Positions 7,182 to 36,173 of a stretch of 64,000 nucleotides of DNA are shown here, one piece after another. Both the position numbers and the translations under genes were made by a program. The DNA is taken from the IMG/VR virus record IMGVR_UViG_3300020179_000005, positions 124,001 through 188,000 of that record; one strand, written 5' to 3'. The notes below the pieces were generated by a model. It was not told where the DNA came from. It searched no databases and saw only the letters and a program-made list of their open reading frames with translations. Numbering within the stretch: the stretch's first letter is position 1; each line of letters starts with the position of its first letter.

Positions 7182-8598
7182 CTATTCTACTATTTTTGTT
7201 TTTTTACTTGGTTTCTTTAAAGAAAAAATAAAATTATCATCATTATAATCTATATTAAAAATAGTACCTTTTGGAATGGTACTTTGAACAATTATCTTAG
7301 ATATGCCAGTTTCTATTTGGTCCCTTCTTATTTGAGCCAATCCTCTAGCCCCCTTAACTGAATCTATGCCTTTTTCTATTAAAGCATCTATCACCCTAGT
7401 GTTGTACTCGGCAAAGAATCCTTTTTTGTTTAATTTTGAAGAAACTAGCTGCATTTCTAATTCTGCTATCTTTTCGCAATCTTGTCTAGAAAGATGATTG
7501 AAGATTACGATCTTGTCAATTCTGTTTAAGAATTCAGGTCTAAAATATTTTCTTACCGCGTCAAGCGTATTTCTTTCGACTAATGACTTAAGGGGTATGG
7601 CAGATGTCGATTGAACATAGTTAATGTTTTTATTGAATCCAGTACCTTTGCCTATCAAATGATCTACCGTTTTTTCGTTACCTAAGTTTGTTGTCAGGAT
7701 AATAATTGTTCCCCTAAAATCTATTATCTTACCTTTTGCATCGGTGATGGCTCCCTCGTCAAATATTGTTAAGAATGTGTTCCAAATGTCTGGATGGGCT
7801 TTTTCAACCTCATCTATGAGAACAACTGAATTTGGATTTTTTTCAATCTGATTTACTAACTGCCCACCTTCATCATGACCAACATAACCAGGAGGAGAAC
7901 CTATCAATTTTGAGTTTTCATGCTTATGTTGAAATTCGCCGCAGTCTATTCTAACCATAGGGATATTAGGATCAAATAAATAATTATGAAGAGTCTTTGC
8001 CAAATGTGTTTTTCCTACTCCAGATGATCCAGAAAATAGAAAAACTCCCAATGGCCTATTTGAATCGTTCATGTCTGCTTGAGACCTAACTAGTGCAGCA
8101 GATACAGTTTCTATTGCCTCATCTTGTCCTATGATGTTAGATTTTAGATGTTCTTCTAAATTAGCAAATTTTACTTTTTCTATTTTCTTTATCTTTTTTA
8201 TTTTTTGAGTGGGATGAGAAGAAGGTCTATCTTTATATTTTGAGATAATATTTTTTAACTCATCAAAATTATTATCCATTACATCGTCTATGTCAAAGTT
8301 AGTATTTGTGTAGGCAATTGATATCCAGTAATCTATATCAAGACCGGGATTTAGCATTACGCATCCGCGTATACAACGCTTCTATGCATCTTTCTGCGTT
8401 TGATCTAGTCATCAAACTTAGTGCATTTGAGACTTCTGTTTTTAGGTTATAAATTACGTATTGAAGAATTTTTCTTCTACGATCTTTTTCTGTTTTTACT
8501 GTTATCTCAGAAATAAATTTTTCTATTTGTTCGGGCTCGAGCACCTTATACTTGACAAACGTATTTAAATCAGGAACATATATTTGGTAAATCTTCAC
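7182..8598 (-). CDS. ClpA/ClpB-family AAA+ ATPase (second nucleotide-binding domain only), frameshifted near 8366
   Basis: IIGQDEAI, RPLGVFLFSGSSGVGKT (Walker A), LIGSPPGYVG, LIDEVEKAHPD, FRPEFLNRID, GARGL; ORF 8338..8598 joins on removing one base. Confidence 0.9.
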
Positions 8599-8984
8599 AC
8601 CAACCCCAAATCTATTTTCATATTTTTAATAAAACATATATACTTATATAGAATATTATTAATATATATATGTATATTAGTAATATAATATATAGTATAT
8701 ATAACTGGGGGTAGGGGGTAGGGGGTGCAATTCAAGTCTAGCAGGTTTAACATCGAATGTCAATTATTCTTATTCTTTTATTTTTTCTATCTTAGGACAG
8801 TTTTCCTGACACGGTCCCGCGTATGCCCAATATCTAAGTAAATCATCGACAGTATTAAACCTATTATTGAGAAGAAATCTAGCTCTGTAAAAATCTTGAC
8901 CAATTACATTTCTATGTTGCATCATATGTCCGTTCTGTGTATACTTGTTGACACCAAGTATACCACCAAAAAACAGAGGAAACT

Positions 8985-9248
8985 ATGACAAGTCAAACAA
9001 GCAAGTTGGAAGAGAAAAACCCTCAATTATTCTACAACATCAAGATTGCCAGAATACAAAAGATGTATACTCTATTAGACAAAATAAGACGTGCTCAACT
9101 CGGAACCGACAAACAATCTAGAGTAGAATATAGGTACATGGAAAAGCAACTTCTAGTTGAAATAGATGAAGAAATTAAATTGGCTGTTAACATGACAAAA
9201 AAATATAAGATAAATTTTTCTGAGAAAGATCTAATCAAAAATGTCTAA
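8985..9248 (+). CDS. Hypothetical protein
   Basis: 87 aa, AGAGGA RBS, overlaps the recA start. Confidence 0.6.
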   Translation: MTSQTSKLEEKNPQLFYNIKIARIQKMYTLLDKIRRAQLGTDKQSRVEYRYMEKQLLVEIDEEIKLAVNMTKKYKINFSEKDLIKNV

Positions 9249-10203
9249 TGAATCTAAAGGTTTAGAACTGGCAATAGCTCAACTTGAAAGACAGTTTGGT
9301 TCTGGATCTATAATGCGTCTTGGTAATTTCAATGTTGAATCTTGGCCTTCAGTTCCAACAGGAGCTCCTTCGCTTGATGCGATTCTTGGAATTGGCGGAC
9401 TTCCAAGAGGAAGAATAGTTGAGATCTATGGTCCAGAATCTTCTGGTAAATCAACCATTGCGCTGTCTGTTGTTACCGAAGCTCAAAAATTAGGTTTACG
9501 TTGTGCGTACATAGATGCTGAACACGCGTTAGATCCAATTTATATGCAATCGTTAGGAGTAGATTTAGATAATCTTTTGTTGTCACAACCAGATTACGGT
9601 GAACAAGCTCTAGAAATAGTTGATCGTTTAATTAAAACAGGGGAAATAGGAGTTGTTGTGATTGACTCTGTTGCCTCACTAATACCCAAGGCTGAACTCG
9701 AAGGTGAAATGGAATCTGCCCAAATGGGACTACAGGCAAGATTAATGGCAAAGGCTATGCGTAAACTGGTTGGCTTAGCCTCAGAAAATAAAACTCTCTT
9801 AATTTTTATTAATCAACTTCGTAATAAAATTGGAATTATGTTTGGTAATCCAGAAACAACTCCAGGCGGCATGGCCCTAAAGTATGCTGCGTCTGTTAGA
9901 ATCGACATTCGCAAGAAAGAAGACTTAAAGGATAAGGATGGAAACTCTATAGGAGTTGCCGTTAAGGCAAAGGTCATCAAGAATAAAATGGCACCGCCGC
10001 TGAAAATGACAGAGTTTGACATACTTTATGGTAAAGGTATAGACAAGTATGGTTGTTATTTTGACATTGCCATAGAAAAAGGAATATTTTCACAACGTGG
10101 AGCCTGGGTGTATTATGGAGACGAATCATTTGCACAAGGTAGAGATAACGCAATTCAGAAACTAAAAGAAAGACAAGATATTTTAGATTTAATTAAATCA
10201 TGA
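9241..10203 (+). CDS. recA: RecA recombinase
   Basis: GGLPRGRIVEIYGPESSGKST, IDAEHALDP, VIDSVA, QARLM, FINQLR, GNPETTPGG, KNKMAPP. Confidence 0.98.
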   Translation: MSNESKGLELAIAQLERQFGSGSIMRLGNFNVESWPSVPTGAPSLDAILGIGGLPRGRIVEIYGPESSGKSTIALSVVTEAQKLGLRCAYIDAEHALDPIYMQSLGVDLDNLLLSQPDYGEQALEIVDRLIKTGEIGVVVIDSVASLIPKAELEGEMESAQMGLQARLMAKAMRKLVGLASENKTLLIFINQLRNKIGIMFGNPETTPGGMALKYAASVRIDIRKKEDLKDKDGNSIGVAVKAKVIKNKMAPPLKMTEFDILYGKGIDKYGCYFDIAIEKGIFSQRGAWVYYGDESFAQGRDNAIQKLKERQDILDLIKS

Positions 10204-10488
10204 ACACACAAAAGATAAATCCCGCTGTTTGTCCAGATTGTAGTTTTCCGCCCAATTTTGCGGTCGTAGATCTTTCGAATAAAGATGACGTGCGACAAAA
10301 GTTTTCCGTTAAATGCAGAGACTGCGGAGATGAATGGTCGGAGTATTTGGAGAAAGATGAATACTAATCTAAAAGATTTAGAAAAGGATTATGACGATTG
10401 TCCGTGCGGCCAAACCGCCGCGACGAGAAAATTTTTTAATTTAATTCAAGATACTTTTTGCGGAAATAGAGATGAGGAAGACGATTAG

Positions 10489-10819
10489 TTGAATTACTAT
10501 ATCCGTATGGGAAAAGATTCATACAAGAGATTGATGGATATCTTTGCTCGTATGATAAAAAATCAAAGATCTGAAATAGTAAACTTTGCAGACATAAACG
10601 ATCCAGATCTAGAAAAGGTAATAACCATACATCCCGACGAACAAGGCAACTTGGTTATTTCCGTATTCAGCCCGGAACAATGGATGATGGTACAAGACGT
10701 TTGCCTAATGACCCGGCAAAGAAGAATCTGAAATAGTATCAGGATTAGAAGAAGACAATCTTACCAAAAAGATGATAATAGATCCCAAAGATTATCCTAA
10801 TACCAACATTGACTTTTAA
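10489..10819 (+). CDS. Hypothetical protein, +1 frameshift at ACCCGG near 10712
   Basis: Removing one C extends ORF 10489..10731 to TAA at 10819 (…TGKEESEIVSGLEEDNL…). Confidence 0.55.
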
Positions 10820-10869
10820 ATAATAAAAATTCCCCCTCCAGCAGGAATTGGGGAGTATATTTTTATATA

Positions 10870-11082
10870 TCAGTAATCGTATCCGTAATCATCCTCATCA
10901 TAAAAATCGTTGGCACTTACCAGTTGTTTTGATGCGCCGTAGTAGGTTTTCATTGTGTAAGCATCGTCGTATTCTTCTTCTATCCACTGTAGGCAATCAG
11001 GGCATCTGATGTTGTCCTCTGAGGTTTCTTGTGAAACCATGATTTCTGAGGCACATGACGGACAGTCTATGAATGTAGGCAT
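10870..11082 (-). CDS. Small zinc-ribbon protein with acidic tail
   Basis: CPSC and CPDC motifs; AAGGAAG RBS. Confidence 0.65.
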   Translation of the reverse strand: MPTFIDCPSCASEIMVSQETSEDNIRCPDCLQWIEEEYDDAYTMKTYYGASKQLVSANDFYDEDDYGYDY

Positions 11083-11343
11083 TTGTCTTCCTTTTTTGCG
11101 GGCGATTTTATGAATATGATGTAGCCGGACTATGACTATACACCATGGAACATATTATGACAACTTTTGTGAACATTTTTTGGCAACCCATATAAAGTCA
11201 TATAAAATCCTAATACCTTAAAATAAGGAAAAATTTATAAAGGGGTAATAGTGAGTATTGTTGGAACATCAAAGCTCTAACATGCCCACCCCGGTATGGG
11301 GGTTCTTATCCACGAATACCAACAACATGAGGAGGAAAAACTC

Positions 11344-11706
11344 ATGAACGCAATACTGAAGGCAATCCAGGATGTACTCGTGTACATTCGTACAAACATG
11401 CGTGAAGATGAGCACATTTGTGCTGATCCATCGCTGTACCAACTGATCACCTTGAGTGGTCAAGTCGACATTGACATCATTGCTGGTGCACTGTACCAGC
11501 TGTATGTCTGTGAGTCACGCACTGTTATCAAGCCACATTCGCATGTGTTCATGCGTCCTGAGGTGCAAGATGCAGTGTACGCAATACTCGGGAATGACGA
11601 ACATGCAAAGAAGGCTGTTCGTTATTCCATCGAGTCAATTCAACACGAACAAATGGCTGAGAAGTGGGCTGCAGAAGGCCGCCCAGTAATCAACCTTCGT
11701 CCATAA
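11344..11706 (+). CDS. Hypothetical protein (first cassette gene)
   Basis: GAGGAGG RBS before ATG 11344. Confidence 0.7.
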   Translation: MNAILKAIQDVLVYIRTNMREDEHICADPSLYQLITLSGQVDIDIIAGALYQLYVCESRTVIKPHSHVFMRPEVQDAVYAILGNDEHAKKAVRYSIESIQHEQMAEKWAAEGRPVINLRP

Positions 11707-11766
11707 GGCGAAACCCCTGCATACCCAGGGGTCATTGTGGTGTGAGAGACCACGATCTGAAGAGCC
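11707..11766 (+). ncRNA. Hammerhead ribozyme (type II topology), copy 1
   Basis: GGC-GAAA-CCCCTG/CAGGGG-TC-ATTGTGGT/ACCACGAT-CTGAAGA-GCC: intact CUGAnGA and GAAA core, GUC site (cleavage predicted after 11733). Confidence 0.85.
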
Positions 11767-11803
11767 ATCTCATATTCCCCGGTACGGGGGTTGCCCCTCT
11801 GAT

Positions 11804-11853
11804 AACAAGGGCTGTGCTGTGCGTCTGACACCACATTAAACACGAATCAGATA
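11804..11853 (+). repeat. 50-bp repeat (second copy 12991-13040), predicted H-type pseudoknot
   Basis: Stem TGTG-ct-GTG/CAC-CACA; loop GTCTGA pairs with TCAGAT in copy 1, ATCTGG with CCAGAT in copy 2. Confidence 0.7.
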
Positions 11854-11916
11854 AAGCGAGTTACACGCTTTCAGCTTTCTATTATGTAACACTTTTCCAC
11901 AAGGAGGAAAAGAGTC

Positions 11917-12294
11917 ATGTTCAACACAATCATCATGGGAGTCAAGGAATTCTTCTTGACTTCATGCGAGCAATACGGACAGATGCTGAGCAACAAGCAG
12001 CAGTACATCGAGGTTGTGGGTAAGTACATTACCCATGATGGCAATCAGGTGTGGCTGGAGCTCAATGGATGCGATGCGTCTGACAGTCATGTGTTTCCCC
12101 ACAAGAACAACATCTTTGGATATCTCAATGAGATGTACAAGGGTAAGATTGTTCGTGTTAAGGGCGAGCGTCGTTTTGACTGGAAGACAGAAACGTGGGG
12201 TTACAGCTGGACCCTGCACTGCGTCAATGTCTGGGAACAGGGCATGGATGCAGCTCCCGCAAACATCAAGAAGATGTGCGGTACCAACTGCTGA
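11917..12294 (+). CDS. Hypothetical protein
   Basis: AAGGAGG RBS, 125 aa. Confidence 0.7.
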   Translation: MFNTIIMGVKEFFLTSCEQYGQMLSNKQQYIEVVGKYITHDGNQVWLELNGCDASDSHVFPHKNNIFGYLNEMYKGKIVRVKGERRFDWKTETWGYSWTLHCVNVWEQGMDAAPANIKKMCGTNC

Positions 12295-12304
12295 GAAGCA
12301 GTAA

Positions 12305-12364
12305 GGCGAAACCCCTGCGTACCCAGGGGTCATTGTGGTGTAAGAGACCACGATCTGAAGAGCC
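12305..12364 (+). ncRNA. Hammerhead ribozyme (type II topology), copy 2
   Basis: Near-identical to copy 1, differing only in loop positions; cleavage predicted after 12331. Confidence 0.85.
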
Positions 12365-12493
12365 ATCTTCGTCGTTGCTTGGAAAAGCGGAATGCAGCTT
12401 TAACGTTACCAAAGCTGCCAGCAGAAATGCTGACATTCAGGTTAAATGACACTTACCTTTAAAAGTATCACAAACAAACATGGAGGTAAAAAC

Positions 12494-12868
12494 ATGTTTG
12501 ATTTCATCCACATGCTGTTCACTGGGATCATCTTGATCCTTGTGGCAGCCTTCGCGGCCGTTGCAGTCGGTGTACTTGCACTGGTCGCATTTGGTCAAAT
12601 TCAGCAGGCACGCAGCGAAAAGGTGTTCGCACCAATCGCTTCACTTCTGGGCATGGTCATTCTCATGTTCGGATTGGCCGGCTTTCCCTGGATTGCTGCT
12701 TGGGCTTTTCCTGAGACGCGATGGGGAGTTGCAATTGGGTTGACCGCTTGGGTGTCAATCCTTTTCCTTGGAGCAGGCCTCATGGTCTGTGAAGAAGAAA
12801 TGACCAATGCACAAAAAAAGCGGAAGAAGGCAAAAAAGCGTTATCCGAGCTATAAAATCAACTATTAA
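12494..12868 (+). CDS. Membrane protein (about 3 TM helices, basic tail)
   Basis: GGAGG RBS; three hydrophobic stretches. Confidence 0.7.
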   Translation: MFDFIHMLFTGIILILVAAFAAVAVGVLALVAFGQIQQARSEKVFAPIASLLGMVILMFGLAGFPWIAAWAFPETRWGVAIGLTAWVSILFLGAGLMVCEEEMTNAQKKRKKAKKRYPSYKINY

Positions 12869-13087
12869 GTAAAAGAAATACACAAAAGAAATACACCCCT
12901 GGGTCAGCGGGCTCTGCTGATCCGGGGGTTTTTCTTTTATGACTAGCAGATAGATTGCTAGTTTGCTCCTCTGTTCTATGCAGAAATGCAAACAAGGGCT
13001 GTGCTGTGCATCTGGCACCACAATAAACACGAACCAGATATTCTTGTTGCCCGTTGGGGAATACCCAACAAACAAGGAGGTAAGCTC

Positions 13088-13429
13088 ATGCTTACTGCAA
13101 TCGCAATCGCAATCCTCGTGGGTGTGGCGGCTTCGGCTGTCACTGCCGCGTTCCTCCAAGCCAAGGTCGTCGGTCTGGTTCACCAGATCAAAGACCTCGT
13201 CGTCCAGATGGGTGACGAAAAGGCAAAGGCTCAAGAAATCATCTCCAAGTTGGAGAAGGATGTTGAGTCATGGAAAAGCAGCTCAAGCCGTCACCTGAAT
13301 GACTGGAGTGAGCTGTACAAAGAAAAGCGGGTATGGACTGAGGCACTTGAAAAAGCAGCCGAAGCCAAAGCCGCCAAGAAGGCCAACAAGACCAGCAAGA
13401 AGCCGGTCAAGAAGGCCAACAAGAAATAA
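13088..13429 (+). CDS. Membrane-anchored coiled-coil protein with Lys-rich tail
   Basis: AAGGAGG RBS; N-terminal TM segment; KKPVKKANKK end. Confidence 0.7.
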   Translation: MLTAIAIAILVGVAASAVTAAFLQAKVVGLVHQIKDLVVQMGDEKAKAQEIISKLEKDVESWKSSSSRHLNDWSELYKEKRVWTEALEKAAEAKAAKKANKTSKKPVKKANKK

Positions 13430-13463
13430 CCACGAATACCAACGGGCAACAATGAAAAGGATT

Positions 13464-13497
13464 ACCCCTGGGGACTTCGGTCTCCGGGGGTTTTTCT
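13464..13497 (+). terminator. Intrinsic terminator (near-identical copy at ~14628-14661)
   Basis: CCCCTGGGGAC-TTCG-GTCTCCGGGGG followed by a T tract. Confidence 0.85.
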
Positions 13498-13550
13498 TTT
13501 ATGACTAGCCATCCGGCTTGTCATCACCAACTACCTGAGGAGGTAGCGCA

Positions 13551-14609
13551 ATGAAACTTATGAATAAAATCAAGAGATTGCTCTTTATGAGCAAGACAGT
13601 AGAAACGGATATCGTCTGGGTGGCTTTCTCCACCTGGCCCAATCATGGGGAATGGCGTCTCCGTCGTCGGTACATCTGGGTAAGGAATGATCGCAAGATC
13701 GCTTTCTTTATCACTGGTGTCATCATGCTGTTTACCACACCAGTGGTAGCCAGTGTGGCGTACAATGTTCTCAGCGCAGATGAGGACACTGTGGTTGAAC
13801 AAACCACTGAAACAACTATCAACAGTGAACCTGTTGAACCCGGATACACAGAGTATTGCGAAGGCAATGTGTGGCAGTGGGATGAAGTGGTGCAAAATTG
13901 GACATGTCAAGTTGACATTGATCCTACTACCACTACAACATCAACAACACTGCCTCCTGTGCATCAGGTCCAGTATGTGTGTGATATGGCGCCATCAACC
14001 AGCAGTAACTACTTGTTCAGGACATTTACAAGTAGTAATGGCACGGTGATATCAGATGGTAGTGCAGAAGACACGCAGTACATCTTCCCATTGATCCAGG
14101 AGAGCGACATATACCTACATGTTGATATCATGGGCATTAATGAAGATCATGAATTGTGGCGTGAATTTGCAGATGTGGCAGAATATCTGTCAATTTATCT
14201 GAATAAGAACGTCACGGTTGGTATTGGTGAGGTTGATGAAGACTTCAATGGCATGGTTTTGCCAATCAGGTCTGAATTTGATCCTCGTCAATCAGGTACA
14301 AGCAATGGTGGTGGCGGTGTTGCATGGGCTGAAACGCGAGTAAGTGGCTTCTTTGGCATTTACTTTGCGGATACTGCCATATACATCCGCGAAAACTATT
14401 TGTTTGCTACTGGTGATTGGGCGAATGATCCACATCGATCATTTAAGTACACCGGGTTCAGCACCTTGATACACGAATTTGGTCATGCTATTGGCTTTGA
14501 TCATGTTCATGGCAAGGATGCAGTTATGTCATACGAAAGTGATGAATTTGTTCGTCATTACCTACCGGGTGATGATGCAGGTTATCAGGCACTAATTTGC
14601 AATAAGTAA
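13551..14609 (+). CDS. Membrane-anchored metzincin (matrixin-like) zinc metalloprotease
   Basis: HEFGHAIGFDH (HExxHxxGxxH), Met-turn AVMSY, TM segment, Thr-rich linker. Confidence 0.85.
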   Translation: MKLMNKIKRLLFMSKTVETDIVWVAFSTWPNHGEWRLRRRYIWVRNDRKIAFFITGVIMLFTTPVVASVAYNVLSADEDTVVEQTTETTINSEPVEPGYTEYCEGNVWQWDEVVQNWTCQVDIDPTTTTTSTTLPPVHQVQYVCDMAPSTSSNYLFRTFTSSNGTVISDGSAEDTQYIFPLIQESDIYLHVDIMGINEDHELWREFADVAEYLSIYLNKNVTVGIGEVDEDFNGMVLPIRSEFDPRQSGTSNGGGGVAWAETRVSGFFGIYFADTAIYIRENYLFATGDWANDPHRSFKYTGFSTLIHEFGHAIGFDHVHGKDAVMSYESDEFVRHYLPGDDAGYQALICNK

Positions 14610-14714
14610 GTAATAAGAAAAAGGATCACCCCTGGGGACTTCGGTCTCCGGGGGTTTTTCTTTTATGACTAGGCATCCGGCCTGTCATACCCAACTACCT
14701 AAGGAGGTAGCGCA

Positions 14715-15464
14715 ATGAATAACAAAATCCGAATAATCGAATCAATCAAGGAAGACCTACGCAGGGCCGGACATTCCCTTAGTGATTATCAGGCGGCTTG
14801 GAAGATGTTGCTAGATTCTGTCAAAGTCGAGGGTAATGACAGCAAGTTCAAGGTCATCAAGGTAGAGACCGAAAACAACAAGAAGATGTTTCCGCTTTTC
14901 TTGCACGACACCCTTACTGGCACAATTGACGAAGAAGAATGTTATCTTCACAACGAACTTAGCAGGTTTGAATTTGATATGACTCAAGGGTTTGTGGCTA
15001 ACGAACACGCTTACTTGTTTGCCTATGGAGAAAGCTTGATCGTTCAAGTGATTATTCGTTTTATGAGCTTTATCGGCGACAACTTTATATTTGATGATGA
15101 TGCGACAAAGTCTGGAAATCGAATCGGAGACTTTACTGCACTTGCGTGGGATTACAATAGCTACAAATACATGGTCGATCCACAAACTTATGGATCATCG
15201 CAAGACATTAATAAGGGCGGTCTTAAAGAGTTTTTCTTTCTTGATGACTCTCGTCATGGCTGGGGTCGCCAGAGTGGACTAGAAGTTCTTGCAGATGTAT
15301 TTGATGGTCATCCAGTTATTGAATCTATCTTGCAGACGAACATGCCAACTTTGTATGGCTACAAGCCTCACAATCCAAGGAATCCTTGGGACGTGTTAAT
15401 CGAGAAGCTAGACGAATACAACAAACAACTAATCGAACGAAACAACAAAAAGGAGAATCAATAA
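14715..15464 (+). CDS. Hypothetical protein
   Basis: 249 aa, AAGGAGG RBS. Confidence 0.7.
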   Translation: MNNKIRIIESIKEDLRRAGHSLSDYQAAWKMLLDSVKVEGNDSKFKVIKVETENNKKMFPLFLHDTLTGTIDEEECYLHNELSRFEFDMTQGFVANEHAYLFAYGESLIVQVIIRFMSFIGDNFIFDDDATKSGNRIGDFTALAWDYNSYKYMVDPQTYGSSQDINKGGLKEFFFLDDSRHGWGRQSGLEVLADVFDGHPVIESILQTNMPTLYGYKPHNPRNPWDVLIEKLDEYNKQLIERNNKKENQ

Positions 15465-16177
15465 TGACTAATTCACCAATGCCCAACCCAACACGCTTGG
15501 AGGCTATGCAACCAGTCTGGAACAATCTCCTAGGAGATGCGGTCTTGGTTGACATGAATAACAACAAGATTGAGTTGAAGCTCAATGAATTCAATCACGA
15601 CAAGAAGTTCTTCAAGATCAATGTCGTGGATGAAATCAAGGGTGAACAACATCTGATGGTTCCGTGTCCGATTGCCCTTGTTGAATACAATGGCGTTGAG
15701 TATCATCATAACTACTTACTTCTGTGGGGTGAATCTGCAGTTGTTCAGGTTAGGATAAATTACAGGACCAACTTTCATCCTGAATATCCTGATCACATCT
15801 GGTCGATTGATCCTTCACCGGAGACTGACTTCATGGCTTGGCTATGGAAATCAGATGCGTACGCTGCGGATGTCAAGGTTTTGTGGAACAATCGAAACCC
15901 TGAAGACAATTGCCAAGACTTTAGCCCAGATGGTCGTTTCAAGCTCATTAATTATAACGATCACTTTGAGCTTCACGAAAGGCTCTCAGGCAACTGGGTG
16001 TGGGTAGACGAATTTGTTCTCAATACGACTTTCTTGCTCGCGGATGTGTTGCTTATTCCGACACATGCTGATATGTGGAGTTGGCTTGTTTGGAGGGTAA
16101 ACACCGAGACCGACTTGTCCAATCCGGACAGCTACTTTAATACGAAGTATCACTACAACAAAAGGGAGAATCAATAA
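15464..16177 (+). CDS. Hypothetical protein, apparent paralogue of the preceding gene
   Basis: AGGAG RBS; shared segments YLFAYGESLIVQV / YLLLWGESAVVQV, DFTALAW / DFMAWLW, VLADVF / LLADVL, KKENQ / KRENQ. Confidence 0.7.
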   Translation: MTNSPMPNPTRLEAMQPVWNNLLGDAVLVDMNNNKIELKLNEFNHDKKFFKINVVDEIKGEQHLMVPCPIALVEYNGVEYHHNYLLLWGESAVVQVRINYRTNFHPEYPDHIWSIDPSPETDFMAWLWKSDAYAADVKVLWNNRNPEDNCQDFSPDGRFKLINYNDHFELHERLSGNWVWVDEFVLNTTFLLADVLLIPTHADMWSWLVWRVNTETDLSNPDSYFNTKYHYNKRENQ

Positions 16178-16485
16178 TGCGTAAGCAGAGCAGAAGAACA
16201 CTTCCGAGGTGCAATGCACAGATATGGCCGAAGAAGAAATACAAACTGAAGAACGGTTTGGAAAGAACACCTGCCATACCCGGTCAACCGAATAATCAGC
16301 GGTGCACCAGGTCAATTAGGTGTCCTCACCACAAGAATCGTAATTCAGAATGCCCAGTAATTGAAGAGGTGGGCAAGACAGTATTCCTTTCCTGGGAACA
16401 GGTCAAGGAATTAATCAACAATGGTCACAGAGAAGTGACTGGAAGAAACTACTACGAGGACAGAAAGGAGAGCAGCAATGCCTAA
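16177..16485 (+). CDS. Basic hypothetical protein with Cys/His cluster
   Basis: TAATG coupling; RCNA…RCTR..RCPHH. Confidence 0.6.
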   Translation: MRKQSRRTLPRCNAQIWPKKKYKLKNGLERTPAIPGQPNNQRCTRSIRCPHHKNRNSECPVIEEVGKTVFLSWEQVKELINNGHREVTGRNYYEDRKESSNA

Positions 16486-16645
16486 TACGCCACTAGCGGG
16501 AGAAAAGTACGGTTGTGCAAAACAACGCAGAGTCGTACATTTCGCAGTGACACTTGAACAATACGAAAGTATTGAAGATGACGCCATGATGGCAAACATG
16601 ACGGTATCTGAATACATTCGTTTCAAGTTGGAATTGAATAAATAA
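16478..16645 (+). CDS. Small ribbon-helix-helix-like DNA-binding protein
   Basis: 55 aa read by hand: RVVHFAVTLEQYESIEDDAMMANMTVSEYIRFKL; AAGGAG RBS. Confidence 0.55.
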   Translation: MPNTPLAGEKYGCAKQRRVVHFAVTLEQYESIEDDAMMANMTVSEYIRFKLELNK

Positions 16646-16697
16646 CTAATAAAAGATTGGGGGATGGCCCTTACCCTCTGGGGGCCATCCCTTTTTC

Positions 16698-16830
16698 TTT
16701 ATTGCTAGCCATCCGGTTTCTTGCTACCGGGTGGTTGGCTCTTCGTAGAGGAGATGCGTGCTGCTCTCCTCTGCGCTCCTTTGCCAGAGATGAGTACATT
16801 ACTAGTAAATCCAGTTTTTTTTATGACTAG
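16698..16830 (+). repeat. ~135-bp non-coding two-hairpin unit (second copy ~17136-17271)
   Basis: Both copies lie between two motif copies; stem GGAGA/TCTCC in one versus GGGGA/TCCCC in the other. Confidence 0.7.
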
Positions 16831-16873
16831 GAATATGGTTTCTTAGTTAAGGGTCTTAGGAGGGCCCAGAACA

Positions 16874-17086
16874 ATGAAGGACTTATTCGATTTATTTGAG
16901 GAAGAATTTGATCTCAGATTGCAATGGATAGAAATGCTGGGTAGGCAGCGGATTCTTTGGAATAGTCAGGGAAGAGGAAGAAACGATGAAGTGGACAAAG
17001 AATTTCGTAGGGTTTGCGATGAGTGCTGCAGGATTGGCATCTTGTTGGCAAGGAAGCAGACTGAATTAGAGGAATTTCAACTCTAA
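16874..17086 (+). CDS. Hypothetical protein
   Basis: AGGAGG RBS in a shared leader. Confidence 0.6.
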   Translation: MKDLFDLFEEEFDLRLQWIEMLGRQRILWNSQGRGRNDEVDKEFRRVCDECCRIGILLARKQTELEEFQL

Positions 17087-17335
17087 TTCATGTGTAAGGA
17101 AAGGATGAGTACATTACTAGTAAATTCATTTTTTCTTTATGGCTAGCCATCCGGTTTCTTGCTTTCCGGTGGTTGGCTCTTCTGAGAGGGGATGCGTTCG
17201 GCTCCCCTTTATGCTTTTCTTTGCCAGGGATGAGTACATAACTAGTAAATCCAGTTTTTTTTTATGGCTAGAGTAAAGGTCTCTGGCTAGGCAGCTCTAC
17301 TGCGCCTAAAAGATAGTAGAGGGAAGGAGCTGCTC

Positions 17336-17662
17336 ATGGCTGGCTACAGTAAGCCAGAAATGAAGCAGTGGCTTTTTGACTTGGTTCTGGAAGGTAATAA
17401 AACGCTTCCAGACTGGCAAGTTGAGATCGACACAAGTGTGTGGGCAGCCTGCACACCAGAAGGTTTCTCCTTGCAGCTCAAGCGAACCGTTGGGGATTAC
17501 TACAAAGTGATCCACCTAGGCGTTATTCGCTGGGATCAGTTGGAGACTGCAATGAGGTTTTCGTGGGTCGACCGCGAACTCGGTGTAGTAAAGCCACCCG
17601 AAGAGGTTATCAACTGGATGTTACTGGCCAGTTCAGATGCCTCCGACGATTCGGTTGAATAA
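17336..17662 (+). CDS. Hypothetical protein
   Basis: AAGGAG RBS. Confidence 0.65.
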   Translation: MAGYSKPEMKQWLFDLVLEGNKTLPDWQVEIDTSVWAACTPEGFSLQLKRTVGDYYKVIHLGVIRWDQLETAMRFSWVDRELGVVKPPEEVINWMLLASSDASDDSVE

Positions 17663-17720
17663 ACCGATTTCGTTGTGATTATGATGGCGATCACCATATC
17701 GCCTGACCAAGAGAAGAAAG

Positions 17721-17741
17721 AGGGGCTTCGGCCCCTTTTTC
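17721..17741 (+). terminator. Intrinsic terminator AGGGGC-TTCG-GCCCCT plus T tract (also ~18058, ~19890, ~24753)
   Basis: GC stem with a C(UUCG)G tetraloop followed by Ts. Confidence 0.85.
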
Positions 17742-17799
17742 TTTATGGCTAGTATTTAGGTCTCTAATCTGAGATCGCTAGTCAAGAAAGGAAAACCCA

Positions 17800-18003
17800 A
17801 TGGCACGGAAGAAGTCGGCCACCACGCAGAACCCAAAGCGTCGGCGTGGCTTGACTGGCGCTGGGTACATCAACACGTTTGAGTACCTGCCGCAGATGGA
17901 AGCCGTTCATCCGAGGAACGGCTACGGTCTGCGTGCTCCTTGGGAGTATCGCCGTAACTGGCGGCGCTTCCACAAGAACAGCAAGCCGAAAGGGAAGAAG
18001 TAA
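17800..18003 (+). CDS. Small basic hypothetical protein
   Basis: AAAGGA RBS; ends NSKPKGKK, like 19579..19851 (NSKPKGKR). Confidence 0.6.
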   Translation: MARKKSATTQNPKRRRGLTGAGYINTFEYLPQMEAVHPRNGYGLRAPWEYRRNWRRFHKNSKPKGKK

Positions 18004-18183
18004 TTCTTCCATGACACATGATGGCGATCACCATGTCGCCTGACCAAGAGAAGAAGAAGGGGCTTCGGCCCCTTTTTCTTTATGACTAGGACTTAGGTCT
18101 CTAGTTATCGTGCCAGGTATGAGCGACACACCTAATCAACAAGTGTCGCACCTTTCCCGAAAGGGAGAAAGGGGGTATCCATC

Positions 18184-18654
18184 ATGGATACTTTCCTGGT
18201 AGTAATGGCAACGCTCTTCTTGGGCGTTGTGACCCTGGTTTCGGTGATCAATGCCGAAGCCATCAACAAGCACTGGAATCTCGCAATGGAGGCGTACGCA
18301 GATCTTGCGTATTCTTTCCAGGAGTTCTGGTGGACAAGCATCAGGCCTGAAATCAGGGGTCTGATGGGCAAAAAGAACCCAGTCTGGGAACCGCCAACGG
18401 CACTTGGGTACTACTTTGGGGATATCGTCAAGCTTGACGACTCTGAGAAGTGGTACATGGTGTTGTCCAGCGGTATCTGGATGATTTCAGTGAGCTCACC
18501 GCTACTCGTCCATGAGTGCGATGACACACTGAAAGTCGTTCAGGCCAAAGGCTGGAAGTACGTGTACAACAACGAAAAAGTCGTTGAACACGTACCCGCA
18601 GATGCCGTAGAGGCATTTCTCGACAGAATGATCGAGGAGAAGATCTACGGCTGA
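18184..18654 (+). CDS. Hypothetical protein with N-terminal TM segment
   Basis: 156 aa between motif and terminator. Confidence 0.65.
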   Translation: MDTFLVVMATLFLGVVTLVSVINAEAINKHWNLAMEAYADLAYSFQEFWWTSIRPEIRGLMGKKNPVWEPPTALGYYFGDIVKLDDSEKWYMVLSSGIWMISVSSPLLVHECDDTLKVVQAKGWKYVYNNEKVVEHVPADAVEAFLDRMIEEKIYG

Positions 18655-18803
18655 ATGTAAGTAGTTGATTGGCACGAGTCAACTACCTACAGAAGAATTA
18701 GGGTGGTCCCTTACCCTCTGGGGGACCACCCTTTTTCTTTATGACTAGTTTTTAGGTTACCAAAGGTGGCCGCTAGTCAAGGGTCTTAGGAGGGCCCACA
18801 ACA

Positions 18804-19445
18804 ATGGAAGCAATGTTCATCATGCTCATGGAGTTCATGAGCAAAGTCATGAATGCTGTGGAGACACGGCATCATGACGGAAAGCGTACGAAAGGCGAAG
18901 GCTCCGGCATTCATTCTTTCGTTTCGCTTGTACGATGGATCAATCAGAACAAAGGCTTGGTCAAGGCAGCAATTGCCAATGACAGAGAAATGTTCGAGTT
19001 GATCATGAAGCAGGCAAGTCAAACGTTGAAGACATACATCAGAACCGGTGTGTGGAACACGGTGTACTGGGTTACCTCATTCGATGGTTACTTCTACCGC
19101 CACCTGTTCGTCGACGACGACACACGCTACAAAATCAATCCGAAAGTTCACTTCGTGTGGACTCCTCGGAATGGACAAAGCATGACCAAGGACGAAGACA
19201 ATCGTCTTTTTGGTAAAATAAGAAACGTTGCAAACAGTCTGGATAAGGCTGGATACGACGTGTTTTGCTATGACATCGAGTGGGAACCAATCACACTAAA
19301 CATTGGAGACGGCGCGGAAAAACGCGTCAAATACAGCTGTGGAAATGTGTTTGAGCTTCTCGAAGAGTTCCTCGACCGGCCAAGCCAAGAAATCAGTAAA
19401 CTGGTTTGGCAAGCAAAAATGGAAGACAAACTCCAGCACGAATAA
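18804..19445 (+). CDS. Hypothetical protein
   Basis: 213 aa, AGGAGG RBS. Confidence 0.7.
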   Translation: MEAMFIMLMEFMSKVMNAVETRHHDGKRTKGEGSGIHSFVSLVRWINQNKGLVKAAIANDREMFELIMKQASQTLKTYIRTGVWNTVYWVTSFDGYFYRHLFVDDDTRYKINPKVHFVWTPRNGQSMTKDEDNRLFGKIRNVANSLDKAGYDVFCYDIEWEPITLNIGDGAEKRVKYSCGNVFELLEEFLDRPSQEISKLVWQAKMEDKLQHE

Positions 19446-19578
19446 ATGAATAAATAAAGACTGAGGGTGGTTCGGGAAATCCGGCCACCCTCTTTCTTTA
19501 TGGCTAGGAATTAGGTCTGTAGTTTTAGACCGTTAGCTTTTGTGTGTGTATGTGTCAATCAAGTACCAGGAGGTACTC

Positions 19579-19851
19579 ATGTCAATACACGAAATGAACG
19601 ACGACTTCCTCGACAGGATGTTTCTCTTGCAGGAACGCCTGGAAAAGGATGATCGTCAAGGAAACAAAATCCACAAGCGACGAGGTACACACTTCGTCAG
19701 GTACTGGTATTTCCCAAACGAGGACCTGTTCATCGTTGGGAAGTGTGAATCAATGGGCAAAGTGGTGAACACCTGGAGTAAGGAAACAACGTTTCTTCTT
19801 TCCAGCGAACCACCACGCAAAAGCAATAGCAAGCCGAAAGGCAAGCGATAA
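19579..19851 (+). CDS. Hypothetical protein
   Basis: AGGAGG RBS before ATG 19579. Confidence 0.65.
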   Translation: MSIHEMNDDFLDRMFLLQERLEKDDRQGNKIHKRRGTHFVRYWYFPNEDLFIVGKCESMGKVVNTWSKETTFLLSSEPPRKSNSKPKGKR

Positions 19852-19964
19852 CAACCAACACACACACACACACAAATGAAATAAGGGAGAGGGGCTTCGG
19901 CCCCTCTTTCTTTATGACTAGGAATATGGTTTCCTGGTCAAGGGTCCAAGGAGGGCCCAAAATA

Positions 19965-20858
19965 ATGAAAAGCATTAACGACATGGAAATGAAGCGACAG
20001 AAATTGACACAACTATGCCAAGAGGTCACAAGTGATGTAATTAAGAAACATGGTTCCCTACGTAATCAATGTGGCCATGGAGCGTCTGAGCTCAGGAAAC
20101 GGGCAAGGAAATCGGGAATTAAGCTCAATCTTCAGGGTGGCTTATTTAATTATGGCACTGAGCACAACTGGTGTGTTGACCCAGAAACAAACGAGATATA
20201 CGATCCAACTGCAGAGCAGTTCATTATTGGAATCAATGGCCTACAGAATGAAGAGACCTCCAAGCTCTACTTGTCATTGAACGATGATGAAATATCTGAT
20301 TTGCAATCTCTTGCCAGGAGCAAGGGATTTATTTGGAGCTTCAGTGAGGGTGTTTCGCAAATCGTCTTTGGCTACCAAGTAAGTATCGCAAATCAGAAAA
20401 TAGTTGACAAGTTTCGGTTTTACTATCCAGACTTGACTCATGTTGTTGTTCGCAACACAAAGGATGAAGTACGGAAAGCAAAGAATGGTAACACCTATGC
20501 TGTTATCAGAAACAATGTTGTTGAGTTTCATATCGATAAAATGAACGTCAAGAAATGGAAGAATGACTTAAACGTAACAGGTCCTGAAGTGGTGAGTTAC
20601 ATTGTGTTCAAGAATCCGAACAACAGCTATTGGATCAGGGTTGTTGAACAAAGGCTGTTTGTTTCAAAGAATGGAAAGACTGGTGTTATAACCAAACTTG
20701 GTGAAGAATTGAAGAACATCAAGATCAATAAGAAAGGCAAGCTTTACAGGACAATAAAGATCGAAGACGGATGTTTTGTGAATGAAATGATTGATCAGCA
20801 TTACTTTTTGCTAATCAAGAGATTTGAAGAACTTACATCACGTAATAGTGATCAATAA
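19965..20858 (+). CDS. Protein with N-terminal transglutaminase/papain-like Cys-His-Asp domain
   Basis: NQCGHGA…EHNWCVD…IYDPTAEQF pattern. Confidence 0.6.
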   Translation: MKSINDMEMKRQKLTQLCQEVTSDVIKKHGSLRNQCGHGASELRKRARKSGIKLNLQGGLFNYGTEHNWCVDPETNEIYDPTAEQFIIGINGLQNEETSKLYLSLNDDEISDLQSLARSKGFIWSFSEGVSQIVFGYQVSIANQKIVDKFRFYYPDLTHVVVRNTKDEVRKAKNGNTYAVIRNNVVEFHIDKMNVKKWKNDLNVTGPEVVSYIVFKNPNNSYWIRVVEQRLFVSKNGKTGVITKLGEELKNIKINKKGKLYRTIKIEDGCFVNEMIDQHYFLLIKRFEELTSRNSDQ

Positions 20859-20973
20859 ATATTCTTTAGCCGATTGATATACAACTAGTAAATTTAACTA
20901 CATTATTAATCTTTTATTTTTATGACTAGTCATCCGACTTAGTCATCAAACCAAAAATGGGGAGGATAAACCC

Positions 20974-23016: not shown

Positions 23017-23132
23017 TAAATATTCTTTAGCCGACTGATATAAGACTAGTATATTTAACTACATTACTAGTCTTTTTTTTTATGACTAGGAATATGGTTT
23101 CCTAGTCAAGGGTCTTAGGAGGGCCCAAAACA

Positions 23133-23672
23133 ATGAAAGCAAACCGCTACTACATCGCTGGGACTGGCTCTCGTGAGCTGATTCTGGATGTTGACAAGCG
23201 TCGTGAGGTCCGTGATTATCTTGCGGACCTTCTGACAAAGGCAAAGGAAAAGCATGGTGACAAGTTGATTGTCATCAGCGGAATGGCAGAAGGCTTTGAT
23301 GAAGCACTTGCTCGTGCTGCAATCATGGCTGATGTGTCGTTTATCGCGGCAATTCCCAGCCCTGATTACATTGAGTACTACTGGGGTAAAACCAGTATGC
23401 TCAGGCGTAACAGAATGAGTGAAGCACAGGAAATCCTGTCAAAGGCACAAGAAATCGTTTACGTGTGCCCATCAAGCCCAAGCAAACGTGGCAATGGCGT
23501 TAAGTATCCGCAAAACGGTGGTGCAAACATCGACCGAAACGAGTGGATGGTCGACCATGCAAACATTGTCTGGGTGTACAATCCAACTACTCCAGGTACC
23601 GCTAGGTGCTATGCCTACCTCAAGAAGGTTGGCAAGCCCGCATTTATCATTGACACCACTAAAAAGCTTTAA
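23133..23672 (+). CDS. SLOG-superfamily (YspA/DUF1273-like) nucleotide-binding protein
   Basis: IAGTGSR, VISGMAEGFD, AAIP, RNEWMVD, GT..C motifs. Confidence 0.75.
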   Translation: MKANRYYIAGTGSRELILDVDKRREVRDYLADLLTKAKEKHGDKLIVISGMAEGFDEALARAAIMADVSFIAAIPSPDYIEYYWGKTSMLRRNRMSEAQEILSKAQEIVYVCPSSPSKRGNGVKYPQNGGANIDRNEWMVDHANIVWVYNPTTPGTARCYAYLKKVGKPAFIIDTTKKL

Positions 23673-23795
23673 CCAGCTAATTGGTTGGTAATAAGGGATC
23701 TATATATGGCTAGTAAATTTAACTATATTACTAGTCTTTTATTTTTTATGGTTAGCCATCCGGCTACCAAAATCAACAATGGGGAGGAAAAACCC

Positions 23796-36126: not shown

Positions 36127-36173
36127 TATATTTATAGCCATATCAACGCAACTATGGAGAAAATGGAGATTAT

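What the first reader, a model, noticed from the sequence alone, without database searches (positions are those of the whole stretch)
11707..12364. Twin hammerhead ribozymes used in place of terminators
Seen: two 60-nt copies with a complete hammerhead core, one immediately after the stop at 11706 and one 10 nt after the stop at 12294. They differ only in loop bases. These first two cassette genes lack the hairpin-T terminator that later cassettes have. Inference: self-cleavage at 11733 and 12331 releases a ~598-nt monocistronic RNA with 5'-OH and 2',3'-cyclic phosphate ends, which an RtcB-type ligase could circularise (retrozyme-like arrangement).
Basis: partly seen in the sequence, partly recalled or inferred. 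Interest (0 to 1): 0.78.

Follow-up and report, generated by a model that had tools for sequence, protein, structure and literature searches.

The report
Two hammerhead ribozymes behind phage genes
Two nearly identical self-cutting RNA motifs (type II hammerhead ribozymes) sit right behind the stop codons of two small genes of a large lake-water phage. This layout is already known from many phages and most likely cuts a multi-gene transcript into single-gene messages.

Summary
[quoted passage not shown] Both match Rfam RF02276 over its full length at 32.6 and 31 bits, just under the gathering score of 37. A relaxed descriptor finds exactly these two sites against 0.01 per shuffled window. A third difference lies just outside the 60 nt. 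Together with the loop I difference it is a compensatory change in the loop I/3'-tail pseudoknot typical of type II hammerheads.

The kind is known. Perreault et al. 2011 described type II hammerheads with short stem II and this pseudoknot, several flanking genes in prophages, and showed cleavage. In viral contigs I found 244 further matches in 131 loci, up to about 10 per contig. Three quarters of a 132-site sample start within 10 nt of an upstream stop codon.

Related lake phages keep this hammerhead at 92-100% identity while the neighbouring genes are swapped, deleted or only 50% identical. ORF2 homologues carry only the 3' copy, so the pair is not conserved. Most likely role: intercistronic cleavage. 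The circular-RNA (retrozyme-like) idea has no support. Cleavage itself is untested.

The parts
11180..11208 (+). Sigma-70-like promoter candidate (TTGGCA, 17-nt spacer, TAAAAT) in the divergent region upstream of ORF1. It is the inferred start of the ORF1-ORF2-ORF3 transcript.
   Evidence: Consensus scan, 10 of 12 matches. It is a pattern match only. The number of such matches in the region is not above the shuffles.
11289..11301 (+). Leader hairpin CCCCGGUAUGGGG. It marks the right edge of a conserved upstream module (11185-11304).
   Evidence: The module boundary at about 11304/11305 is seen in L132, L133, L135, L138 and L139.
11344..11706 (+). ORF1, 120 aa, of unknown function. The RBS GAGGAGG lies at 11329-11335.
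   Evidence: No Pfam or PHROG family matched. The L141 homologue is 81% aa identical.
11707..11773 (+). Hammerhead 1 (type II).
- Stem II: GGC 11707-11709 with GCC 11764-11766.
- GAAA: 11710-11713.
- Stem III: 11713-11719 with 11726-11732.
- Cleavage: after C11733.
- Stem I: 11734-11741 with 11749-11756.
- CUGAAGA: 11757-11763.
- Pseudoknot: loop I 11744-11747 with tail 11768-11771, extendable to 11742-11747 with 11768-11773.
   Evidence: RF02276 at 32.6 bits, E 1.7e-4, full-length. Model R1 scores 91.6 bits. The minimum-free-energy fold equals the hammerhead fold at -24.0 kcal/mol.
11777..11906 (+). Conserved structured leader upstream of ORF2. It consists of hairpin 11777-11789, then two conserved hairpins. 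Its first part, 11804-11853, is repeated at 12991-13040 upstream of ORF4.
   Evidence: family D15. It is 82-88% identical upstream of ORF2 homologues whose coding sequence is 67-88% identical. Three pairs show compensatory changes.
11917..12294 (+). ORF2, 125 aa, of unknown function, with a weak lead towards an OB fold. The RBS AAGGAGG lies at 11901-11907. This is the gene between the two ribozymes.
   Evidence: Only two homologue clusters were found, at 88% and 49% identity. The Atlas structure lead has a TM-score of about 0.5.
12305..12369 (+). Hammerhead 2 (type II), with the same anatomy shifted by 598 nt. Cleavage is after C12331. The pseudoknot pairs AAGA 12342-12345 with UCUU 12366-12369.
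   Evidence: RF02276 at 31 bits, E 4.5e-4. Model R1 scores 88.6 bits. The compensatory change G-C to A-U lies in pseudoknot pair 41/69. A competing hairpin folds at -26.1 against -24.0 kcal/mol for the hammerhead fold.
12494..12868 (+). ORF3, 124 aa, hydrophobic. It is the last gene of the inferred transcription unit.
   Evidence: No family matched.
12895..12929 (+). The first strong intrinsic-terminator-like hairpin with a T run, followed by the recurring TTTTTCTTTTATGACTAG motif.
   Evidence: 16 pairs, 10 of them G-C; families D1 and D6.

Best explanation
The two elements are type II hammerhead self-cleaving ribozymes, each encoded directly behind the stop codon of a small gene. The genes lie in the rightward small-gene region of a 209.7-kb lake-water phage.

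ORF1, ORF2 and ORF3 are most likely transcribed together, from about 11180 to the terminator at 12895-12929. As each ribozyme is made it folds into stem III, stem I, a 3-bp stem II and a 4-6-bp pseudoknot between loop I and the 3' tail. It then cuts after C11733 or C12331.

This turns the three-gene transcript into single-gene RNAs. Each upstream message ends 27 nt (ORF1) or 37 nt (ORF2) after its stop codon, in the stem III hairpin with a 2',3'-cyclic phosphate. Each downstream message starts with a 5'-OH and the stem I hairpin. The fates of neighbouring messages (stability, translation) are thereby uncoupled.

The ribozyme belongs to the upstream gene as its 3' module. The pairing around ORF2 is a consequence of two such gene-plus-ribozyme units lying in tandem.

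Shown here: the motif, its family membership by sequence and structure, its conservation and its placement. Inferred: co-transcription, cleavage in the cell, and the effect on message fate.
For: - **Core and layout.** All core positions are canonical (C3 U4 G5 A6 N7 G8 A9, G12 A13 A14, A15.1-U16.1, C17). Standard pairs lie next to the core, and the layout is type II.
- **Model and chance.** Rfam RF02276 matches full-length. The descriptor finds 2 sites against 0.01 in shuffles.
- **Pseudoknot.** It sits in the register described for type II hammerheads, with a compensatory G-C to A-U change between the copies.
- **Family covariation.** In 150 viral relatives, 98.2% of cells are paired, 16 of 18 pairs show double changes, and 0 of 500 shuffles reach the observed values.
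- **Stem III swap.** L138:1633-1727 keeps the same stem I, core and tail but has a wholly different stem III.
- **Placement.** 75% of 132 viral type II hammerheads start within 10 nt of the stop of an upstream same-strand open frame of at least 50 codons, against 7% of random positions. The window copies lie at 0 and 10 nt.
- **Conservation.** The ribozyme is 92-100% identical in relatives whose flanking genes are replaced, absent or about 50% aa identical.
- **No terminator.** No terminator-like site lies between the genes; the first is at 12895.
- **Precedent.** Perreault et al. 2011 (PMC3088659) reported multiple hammerheads flanking genes in prophages. These cleaved in vitro and in E. coli and were proposed to process long phage transcripts into gene-length mRNAs. 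Three type II hammerheads of Desulfovibrio vulgaris were shown to cleave in vivo (PMC8782182).
Against: - There is no RNA evidence for this phage. No true RNA run holding it could be listed, and the two 'RNA' runs are probably DNA and only carry relatives' contigs.
- The Rfam scores are below the gathering threshold.
- Nearest-neighbour folding in 370-nt context does not predict the 3-bp stem II (probability 0.0), although it cannot model the pseudoknot.
- Hammerhead 2 has a competing hairpin that is 2 kcal/mol more stable than the hammerhead fold.
- Co-transcription rests on a weak promoter pattern and on the absence of terminators. The conserved leader 11777-11906 could hold a promoter of its own.
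- Most relatives carry an extra base in the core (CUGAAUGA or CUGAGUGA), a kind of insertion reported to lower activity. High cleavage speed may therefore not be what is selected.
Confidence: 0.72

Rival explanations
1. DNA-level module. The ribozyme sequence, like the conserved leader, mainly serves as a shared joint at which related phages exchange, gain or lose small gene cassettes by homologous recombination. Its near-identity across phages would then reflect recent exchange rather than selection on RNA cleavage. This can coexist with the best explanation.
For: - L141 has ORF1, one hammerhead and then window 12369 onwards, so exactly one 598-nt unit is missing.
- L133 and L135 are 96% identical to the window up to 11305, then carry a different gene, then the hammerhead at 100% identity.
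- L138 joins leader 11251-11304 directly to 11777-12362.
- Wastewater contigs carry the hammerhead and the leader with other flanks.
- The ribozyme is 92-97% identical where the adjacent coding sequence is 69% identical.
Against: - Within the ribozyme, changes respect its structure: U-A to U-G in stem I, a compensatory pseudoknot change, variation at N7, and a full stem III swap with pairing kept. Conservation of a mere recombination joint would not predict this.
- The wider family shows strong covariation and a fixed position after stop codons.
Confidence: 0.15
2. Retrozyme-like circle. The 598-nt RNA released by both cuts is joined end to end by an RtcB-type ligase, or by the ribozyme itself. 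The product would be a circular RNA carrying ORF2.
For: Cleavage would leave the 5'-OH and 2',3'-cyclic phosphate ends that RtcB joins (established chemistry; cites Tanaka and Shuman 2011). The two half-ribozymes at the ends of the unit could reassemble into one hammerhead. The 598-nt unit folds more stably than shuffles (z = -4.6).
Against: - The pair is not conserved. ORF2 homologues in L142 and L144 have only the 3' copy (filters off), and L141 has a single copy.
- The ends of a type II ribozyme are held together only by a 3-bp stem II, and the predicted fold shows no end-to-end helix.
- No RtcB or reverse transcriptase was found among the 31 window ORFs scanned with Pfam, which include all ORFs of 300 aa or more.
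- Perreault et al. 2011 could not detect circular or spliced products from comparable arrays.
- The unit is coding and has its own RBS, unlike retrozymes.
Confidence: 0.06
3. Translation-gated switch. Because the ribozyme starts at or next to the stop codon, a ribosome terminating on the upstream gene covers stem II and the 5' strand of stem III. Cleavage would then depend on how heavily the upstream gene is translated.
For: The 0-10 nt spacing to the stop codon holds here and in 75% of 132 viral examples. In relatives the junction TAA-GGCGAAAC is kept while the upstream genes differ.
Against: This is purely positional evidence. Close packing of genes and 3' elements is expected in phages anyway. 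Hammerhead 2 lies 10 nt from its stop and L138's second copy lies 4 nt away, so the register is not fixed.
Confidence: 0.04
4. Inactive relics or a chance resemblance.
For: The Rfam scores are below the gathering cut-off. Hammerhead 2 has a competing fold. No activity data exist.
Against: The core is complete. The descriptor expectation is 0.01 per window. Sequence is conserved and structure-respecting variation is seen across phages.
Confidence: 0.03

Closest known systems
Type II hammerhead ribozymes of bacteria and phages (Rfam RF02276; Perreault et al. 2011, PMC3088659), including the arrays that flank genes in prophages of Agrobacterium tumefaciens, Azorhizobium caulinodans and Clostridium scindens
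   Same: Same core, same permuted layout with an open and very short stem II, and same pseudoknot between loop I and the 3' tail. It lies on the same strand as small phage genes, with several copies spaced one gene apart. The proposed role is the same: cutting long phage transcripts into gene-length mRNAs.
   Different: The sequence subfamily is new. It comes from a 209.7-kb uncultured lake phage and its relatives, and no DNA match was found in the phage record collection. It scores just under Rfam's gathering cut-off. The pseudoknot sequence is GAGA/UCUC instead of the consensus GGC-type. Cleavage has not been tested.
Retrozymes and viroid-like circular RNAs with hammerheads (Cervera et al. 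2016; de la Pena and Cervera 2017, PMC5680766)
   Same: Two direct hammerhead copies bound a unit of about 600 nt, and cleavage leaves ligatable ends.
   Different: Those carry type III hammerheads inside long repeats in eukaryotic genomes, have a non-coding body with primer-binding and polypurine tracts, and produce circular RNA and spread by reverse transcription. Here the ribozyme is type II in a DNA phage, the body is a gene with its own RBS, the pair is not conserved in relatives, and no reverse transcriptase was seen.
Promoter-early stem-loop (PeSL) cassettes of T4-type phages (Arbiol et al. 2010; recalled from memory, not checked here)
   Same: Short conserved non-coding modules bound small, variable early genes and mark the joints at which related phages differ by whole cassettes.
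   Different: PeSLs are promoter-plus-terminator DNA or RNA hairpins, not ribozymes. The comparison concerns genome plasticity only and was not tested beyond the indel pattern.
Haloarchaeal virus HF1/HF2 hammerhead upstream of the helicase gene (Perreault et al. 2011)
   Same: A hammerhead within an early polycistronic viral transcript, with a mapped 5' end close to the cleavage site.
   Different: That one is a core variant placed 13 nt upstream of a start codon, in an archaeal virus. The ones here are canonical and abut stop codons.

Membership tests
Hammerhead ribozyme, type II (RF02276) | Conserved core: C3 U4 G5 A6 N7 G8 A9, G12 A13 A14, A15.1-U16.1, H17 | tested here: met
   Both copies read CUGAAGA, GAAA and GUC with C17, and no core position deviates.
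Hammerhead ribozyme, type II (RF02276) | Three helices around the core with standard pairs next to it; stems I and III closed by loops and stem II open | tested here: met
   Stem I has 8 bp, stem III has 7 bp including A15.1-U16.1, and stem II has 3 bp (GGC/GCC) with G10.1-C11.1. For copy 1 the minimum-free-energy fold of the isolated 72-mer equals this structure.
Hammerhead ribozyme, type II (RF02276) | Pseudoknot of 4 or more pairs between loop I and the nucleotides just 3' of stem II | tested here: met
   GAGA:UCUC in copy 1 (extendable to 6 pairs) and AAGA:UCUU in copy 2. This is one compensatory change, and it starts one base after stem II as in many viral members.
Hammerhead ribozyme, type II (RF02276) | Score at or above Rfam's gathering threshold (37 bits) | tested here: not met
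   32.6 and 31 bits, full-length, with E 1.7e-4 and 4.5e-4 in a 1.1-kb scan. The shortfall lies in the loop, tail and stem II columns, not in the core.
Hammerhead ribozyme, type II (RF02276) | Covariation of the stems among relatives | tested here: met
   In 150 viral matches to model R1, 98.2% of cells are paired, 16 of 18 pairs have double changes and 0 of 500 shuffles reach this. The alignment was fitted to the model. L138's second copy has a swapped stem III.
Hammerhead ribozyme, type II (RF02276) | Site-specific self-cleavage giving a 2',3'-cyclic phosphate and a 5'-OH | not testable with these tools
   No RNA data could be obtained for this phage.
Retrozyme / viroid-like circular RNA | Type III hammerheads within long direct repeats bounding a non-coding unit | tested here: not met
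   Type II ribozymes, 67-nt repeats, and a unit that encodes ORF2 with its own RBS.
Retrozyme / viroid-like circular RNA | The two-ribozyme unit is the conserved entity | tested here: not met
   ORF2 homologues in L142 and L144 have only the 3' copy, and L141 lacks the unit.
Retrozyme / viroid-like circular RNA | A circular RNA product | not testable with these tools
   No RNA reads were available. Perreault et al. 2011 found none in comparable prophage arrays.
Intrinsic (Rho-independent) terminator | A G+C-rich hairpin directly followed by a T run | tested here: not met
   No such site lies at 11707-11916 or 12295-12493. Stem III is followed by CAUUG.

The most novel reading that the evidence does not exclude
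The conserved unit is a three-part cassette: a structured leader (11777-11906), a small gene, and a type II hammerhead at its stop codon. These lake phages shuffle such cassettes as whole units. The ribozyme would be both the maker of the message's 3' end and the DNA joint for cassette exchange. Its near-universal position within 10 nt of a stop codon in phages would reflect coupling of cleavage to translation termination.
Probability: 0.15. Interest if true: 0.55.

Novelty: new member of a known kind. Interest (0 to 1): 0.3.

Why it matters
The biological purpose of the hundreds of hammerheads in bacteria and phages is still open (reviewed in PMC6765202). This locus offers a clean, small natural test case.

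- It has two canonical copies, one gene between them and no terminators.
- Natural relatives differ by one cassette, by a swapped stem III, or by a one-base core insertion.
- Two comparative observations made here could guide experiments on what these ribozymes do for phage gene expression. First, three quarters of a 132-site sample of phage type II hammerheads start within 10 nt of a stop codon. Second, the ribozyme is better conserved than the genes it follows.

It does not change what is known about the ribozyme class itself.

Tried and rejected
- **Rfam whole-window scans.** Scans at the gathering threshold and at E<=1 found only tRNAs. The hammerheads appeared only when 1.1 kb was scanned, so those negatives reflect the filters.
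- **Phage record collection.** A DNA search found no match.
- **Protein-based locus search.** Searches with ORF1 and ORF2 in viral contigs returned only the same phage, as did a scan specific to stem I.
- **RNA evidence.**
  - No RNA run was listed.
  - With kind 'any', 18 lake or freshwater DNA runs hold the stretch, and two wastewater 'RNA' runs hold 4-5% of the words.
  - On laying, the wastewater runs proved to be probably DNA. They carry relatives' contigs with the hammerhead and the leader but other flanks.
  - No pile-ups of ends and no 12331-to-11734 joint were seen.
- **Other hammerheads in the window.** Model R1 with filters off found none. A type I/III descriptor gave one minimal-stem match near 38751 on the minus strand, antisense in a coding region. 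I take it as chance.
- **Folding in context.** The 3-bp stem II is not predicted. I do not count this against the ribozyme, because the method ignores the pseudoknot.
- **Fold of the 598-nt unit.** It shows no end-closing helix.
- **Gene function.**
  - Pfam and PHROG scans of ORF1 and ORF2 gave nothing.
  - The homologue search for ORF2 found two clusters only.
  - The Atlas search gave a weak OB-fold lead for ORF2 and nothing for ORF1.
- **Literature.** A search for a described link between hammerheads and stop codons found nothing specific.
Full report
**1. The observation**

The sequence is as described.
- ORF1 (11344-11706, 120 aa) ends with TAA at 11704-11706, and the motif begins at G11707.
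- ORF2 (11917-12294, 125 aa) ends with TGA at 12292-12294, and the second motif begins at G12305.

The repeat finder reports two 67-nt copies, 11704-11770 and 12302-12368, at 97% identity and 598 nt apart (family D11).

Read 5' to 3', each copy contains:
- GGC, the 3' strand of stem II;
- GAAA;
- a 7-bp hairpin (stem III, ACCCCUG/CAGGGGU) ending in GUC;
- an 8-bp hairpin (stem I, AUUGUGGU/ACCACGAU);
- CUGAAGA;
- GCC, the 5' strand of stem II.

This is a hammerhead in the circularly permuted type II layout, with every core position canonical. Cleavage would fall after C11733 and C12331.

**2. Is it more than chance?**

- Rfam's Hammerhead_II model (RF02276) matches both copies over its full length at 32.6 and 31 bits (E 1.7e-4 and 4.5e-4 for the 1.1 kb scanned).
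- These scores are under the curated cut-off of 37 bits. The matches were lost by the speed filters when the whole window was scanned.
- A relaxed type II descriptor of my own required the core, at least 4 bp in stems I and III, and 2 bp in stem II. It finds exactly these two sites in 64 kb, against a mean of 0.01 in 100 dinucleotide-preserving shuffles.
- The isolated 72-mer of copy 1 folds into exactly the hammerhead secondary structure as its minimum-energy fold (-24.0 kcal/mol, z = -2.5).

**3. The pseudoknot**

One base beyond the repeat there is a third difference, 11771/12369 (C to U).
- Loop I GAGA (11744-11747) pairs with tail UCUC (11768-11771) in copy 1.
- Loop I AAGA pairs with tail UCUU in copy 2.

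The two changes are therefore compensatory. The relatives L134 and L141 have the downstream flank of copy 2 but the GAGA/UCUC version, so both changes arose together on this phage's copy 2.

A pseudoknot of four or more pairs between loop I and the nucleotides just after stem II is the tertiary contact described for type II hammerheads. It was shown by mutation and rescue to be needed for fast cleavage (PMC3088659).

The same paper reports stem II of two pairs as common and one pair as active, and that lengthening stem II lowers activity. Nearest-neighbour folding in native context does not predict stem II, but it cannot see the pseudoknot.

Copy 2 has a competing hairpin (UGAAGA/UCUUCG) that is 2 kcal/mol more stable than the hammerhead fold. 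I record this as a caveat.

**4. Where the window comes from**

ORF1 and ORF2 occur at 100% identity in three IMG/VR contigs, the longest of 209,701 nt. The same contig is Ga0194134_10000025. Eighteen lake-water or freshwater DNA runs hold the stretch.

The window encodes:
- RecA (9241-10203);
- a ClpX-like AAA protein (7182-8357, minus strand);
- a helicase (41915-43603);
- a subtilase (45026-46438);
- an AAA ATPase (58237-59835);
- a JAB/ThiF pair (55317-57860);
- six tRNAs.

Most ORFs match no family. It has no DNA match among deposited phage records. It is a large uncultured freshwater phage of unknown host.

**5. The family in other viruses**

- Of 165 matches, 135 form both stems, although the pattern did not ask for pairing.
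- A covariance model built from eight sequences (R1) finds 176 matches in 100 of these loci and 68 in a further 31 loci, 14 of them in the lake-phage loci of section 6. Some contigs have up to about ten.
- On the 150 best matches, 98.2% of cells pair, 16 of 18 pairs show changes on both sides, and no shuffle reaches the observed values. The alignment was fitted to the model.
- Even with the narrow pattern, 18 of 104 locus-strands carry two to five copies 240-2750 nt apart.

The 'twin' layout is therefore a small instance of a common phage architecture.

I also measured placement. In 132 viral examples, 75% start within 10 nt after the stop of an upstream same-strand open frame of at least 50 codons, or overlap it by one base. 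Only 7% of random positions do so. The window's copies lie at 0 and 10 nt.

**6. Close relatives**

A scan of metagenome contigs for the 5' half of this particular ribozyme gave eleven loci. Homologues of ORF2 gave five more.

The ribozyme is 92-100% identical in all of them (83% in L138's first copy), while the surroundings differ:
- **L133 and L135** are 96% identical to the window from 7496 to 11305. They then carry a different gene and rejoin at the ribozyme (100% identity).
- **L141** is 78% identical over 4.7 kb. It has the ORF1 homologue (81% aa), one ribozyme, and then continues as window 12369 onwards at 97% identity. Exactly one 598-nt unit is missing.
- **L138** joins the upstream leader (11251-11304) directly to 11777-12362, with no ORF1 unit. 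Its second ribozyme (1633-1727) has the same stem I, core and tail but a quite different, longer stem III, and lies 4 nt after a TAG stop.
- **L132, L136, L139 and L140** have the ribozyme followed by an RBS and a start codon about 21 nt later.
- **L142** has an ORF2 homologue of about 50% aa and 69% nt identity. It keeps the leader (86% identity) and the 3' ribozyme (97% to copy 1), but has no ribozyme upstream. L144, which encodes the 88%-identical ORF2 homologue P0001, also has none upstream (filters off).

Two conclusions follow. First, the conserved unit is a gene plus its 3' ribozyme, not a gene between two ribozymes. Second, the non-coding modules are better conserved than the genes, and cassette differences among phages fall at these modules.

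Changes inside the ribozyme respect its structure:
- U-A becomes U-G in stem I;
- the pseudoknot pair changes on both sides;
- the non-conserved N7 varies.

Most relatives read CUGAAUGA or CUGAGUGA, a one-base insertion in the core. An insertion after A6 was reported as a low-activity natural variant. The window's two copies, and those of L133 and L135, have the canonical seven bases.

**7. Mechanism**

- No terminator-like site lies between ORF1, ORF2 and ORF3; the first is at 12895-12929.
- A sigma-70-like pattern lies at 11180-11208 in the divergent region upstream of ORF1 (pattern match only).
- I infer one transcript covering the three genes, cut co-transcriptionally at both ribozymes.
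- The upstream product keeps its stop codon plus 27 nt (ORF1) or 37 nt (ORF2), ending in the stem III hairpin with a cyclic phosphate.
- The downstream product begins with a 5'-OH and the stem I hairpin.
- Products of a type II ribozyme are held together only by the 3-bp stem II, so release should be fast and religation unlikely.
- The likely effect is to uncouple the stability and translation of neighbouring messages. This is the role suggested for bacterial and phage ribozymes in the literature, and it has not been proven for any of them.
- The ribozyme does not replace a terminator in the sense of stopping the polymerase.

**8. The circular-RNA idea**

The end chemistry fits RtcB, and the two half-ribozymes could reassemble. 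However:
- the pair is not conserved (section 6);
- I found no RtcB or reverse transcriptase among the 31 window ORFs scanned with Pfam, which include all ORFs of 300 aa or more;
- the fold of the unit shows no end-closing helix;
- Perreault et al. looked for circles and spliced products in comparable arrays without success;
- retrozymes differ in ribozyme type, host, repeat length and in being non-coding.

I could not test for a junction, because no usable RNA data exist in the runs served.

**9. Verdict**

The identification as hammerheads is right, and the kind and the arrangement are already known. This is a new sequence subfamily in an uncultured lake phage.

The points of some interest are comparative:
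- placement at stop codons;
- conservation above that of the flanking genes;
- cassette differences that fall at the ribozyme and the leader.

Cleavage in vitro and in vivo remains to be shown.

Noticed in passing
window 12929-23766 (12 copies, e.g. 13491-13519, 14655-14683, 17129-17157, 20912-20940): The motif TTTTTCTTTATGACTAG recurs directly behind terminator hairpins, often followed by CCATCCGG. It marks the boundaries of at least a dozen small-gene cassettes. It may be a phage-specific promoter joined to the terminator.
   Followed up: no
window 11777-11906 and 12991-13040; L142:518-657, L143:31-170, L144:1716-1855, L138:39-176, L132:426-565 (minus): A conserved leader lies upstream of ORF2, with its first 50 nt also upstream of ORF4. 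It is 82-88% identical in relatives, including L142, whose ORF2 coding sequence is only 69% identical. Two of its hairpins keep pairing through three double changes. Its function is unknown; it could be a promoter, a stabiliser or a regulator.
   Followed up: partly
L131, L132, L134, L136, L139-L143, L145, L146 (e.g. L141:10170-10248): Most relatives' copies of this ribozyme read CUGAAUGA or CUGAGUGA, which is one extra base in the catalytic core. The window, L133 and L135 have the canonical CUGAAGA. An insertion after A6 is reported to give low activity.
   Followed up: partly
L138:1633-1727: This ribozyme has the same stem I, core and tail as the window's, but a wholly different and longer stem III (CUUCUCU/AGAGAAG with a 20-nt loop). 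It lies 4 nt after a TAG stop and 21 nt before the next start codon.
   Followed up: yes
window 55317-57089 and 57093-57860: Adjacent genes encode a JAB-domain protein and a ThiF/E1-like protein. This pair recalls ubiquitin-like conjugation modules and is unusual for a phage.
   Followed up: no
window 33671-48149: Six tRNA genes (Arg-TCT, Leu-TAA, Asn-GTT, Lys-TTT, Val-TAC, Met-CAT) are scattered among replication-type genes.
   Followed up: no
window 12357-12372: In hammerhead 2 the tail change C12369U also creates a hairpin, UGAAGA/UCUUCG, that sequesters core bases. It is 2 kcal/mol more stable than the hammerhead fold in a model that ignores the pseudoknot.
   Followed up: partly
window 17681-17766 and 18018-18103: An 86-nt repeat (93% identity) spans the end of a small ORF, a GGGGCTTCGGCCCC terminator and the cassette motif. 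It suggests a recent cassette duplication.
   Followed up: no
window about 38670-38751, minus strand: This is the single match to a loose type III hammerhead descriptor. It is antisense inside ORF 36174-38759 and has minimal stems, so I take it as chance.
   Followed up: partly
window 11917-12294: The ORF2 product has a weak structural resemblance to OB-fold nucleic-acid-binding domains (TM-score about 0.5, model pLDDT 0.61). This is a lead only.
   Followed up: partly
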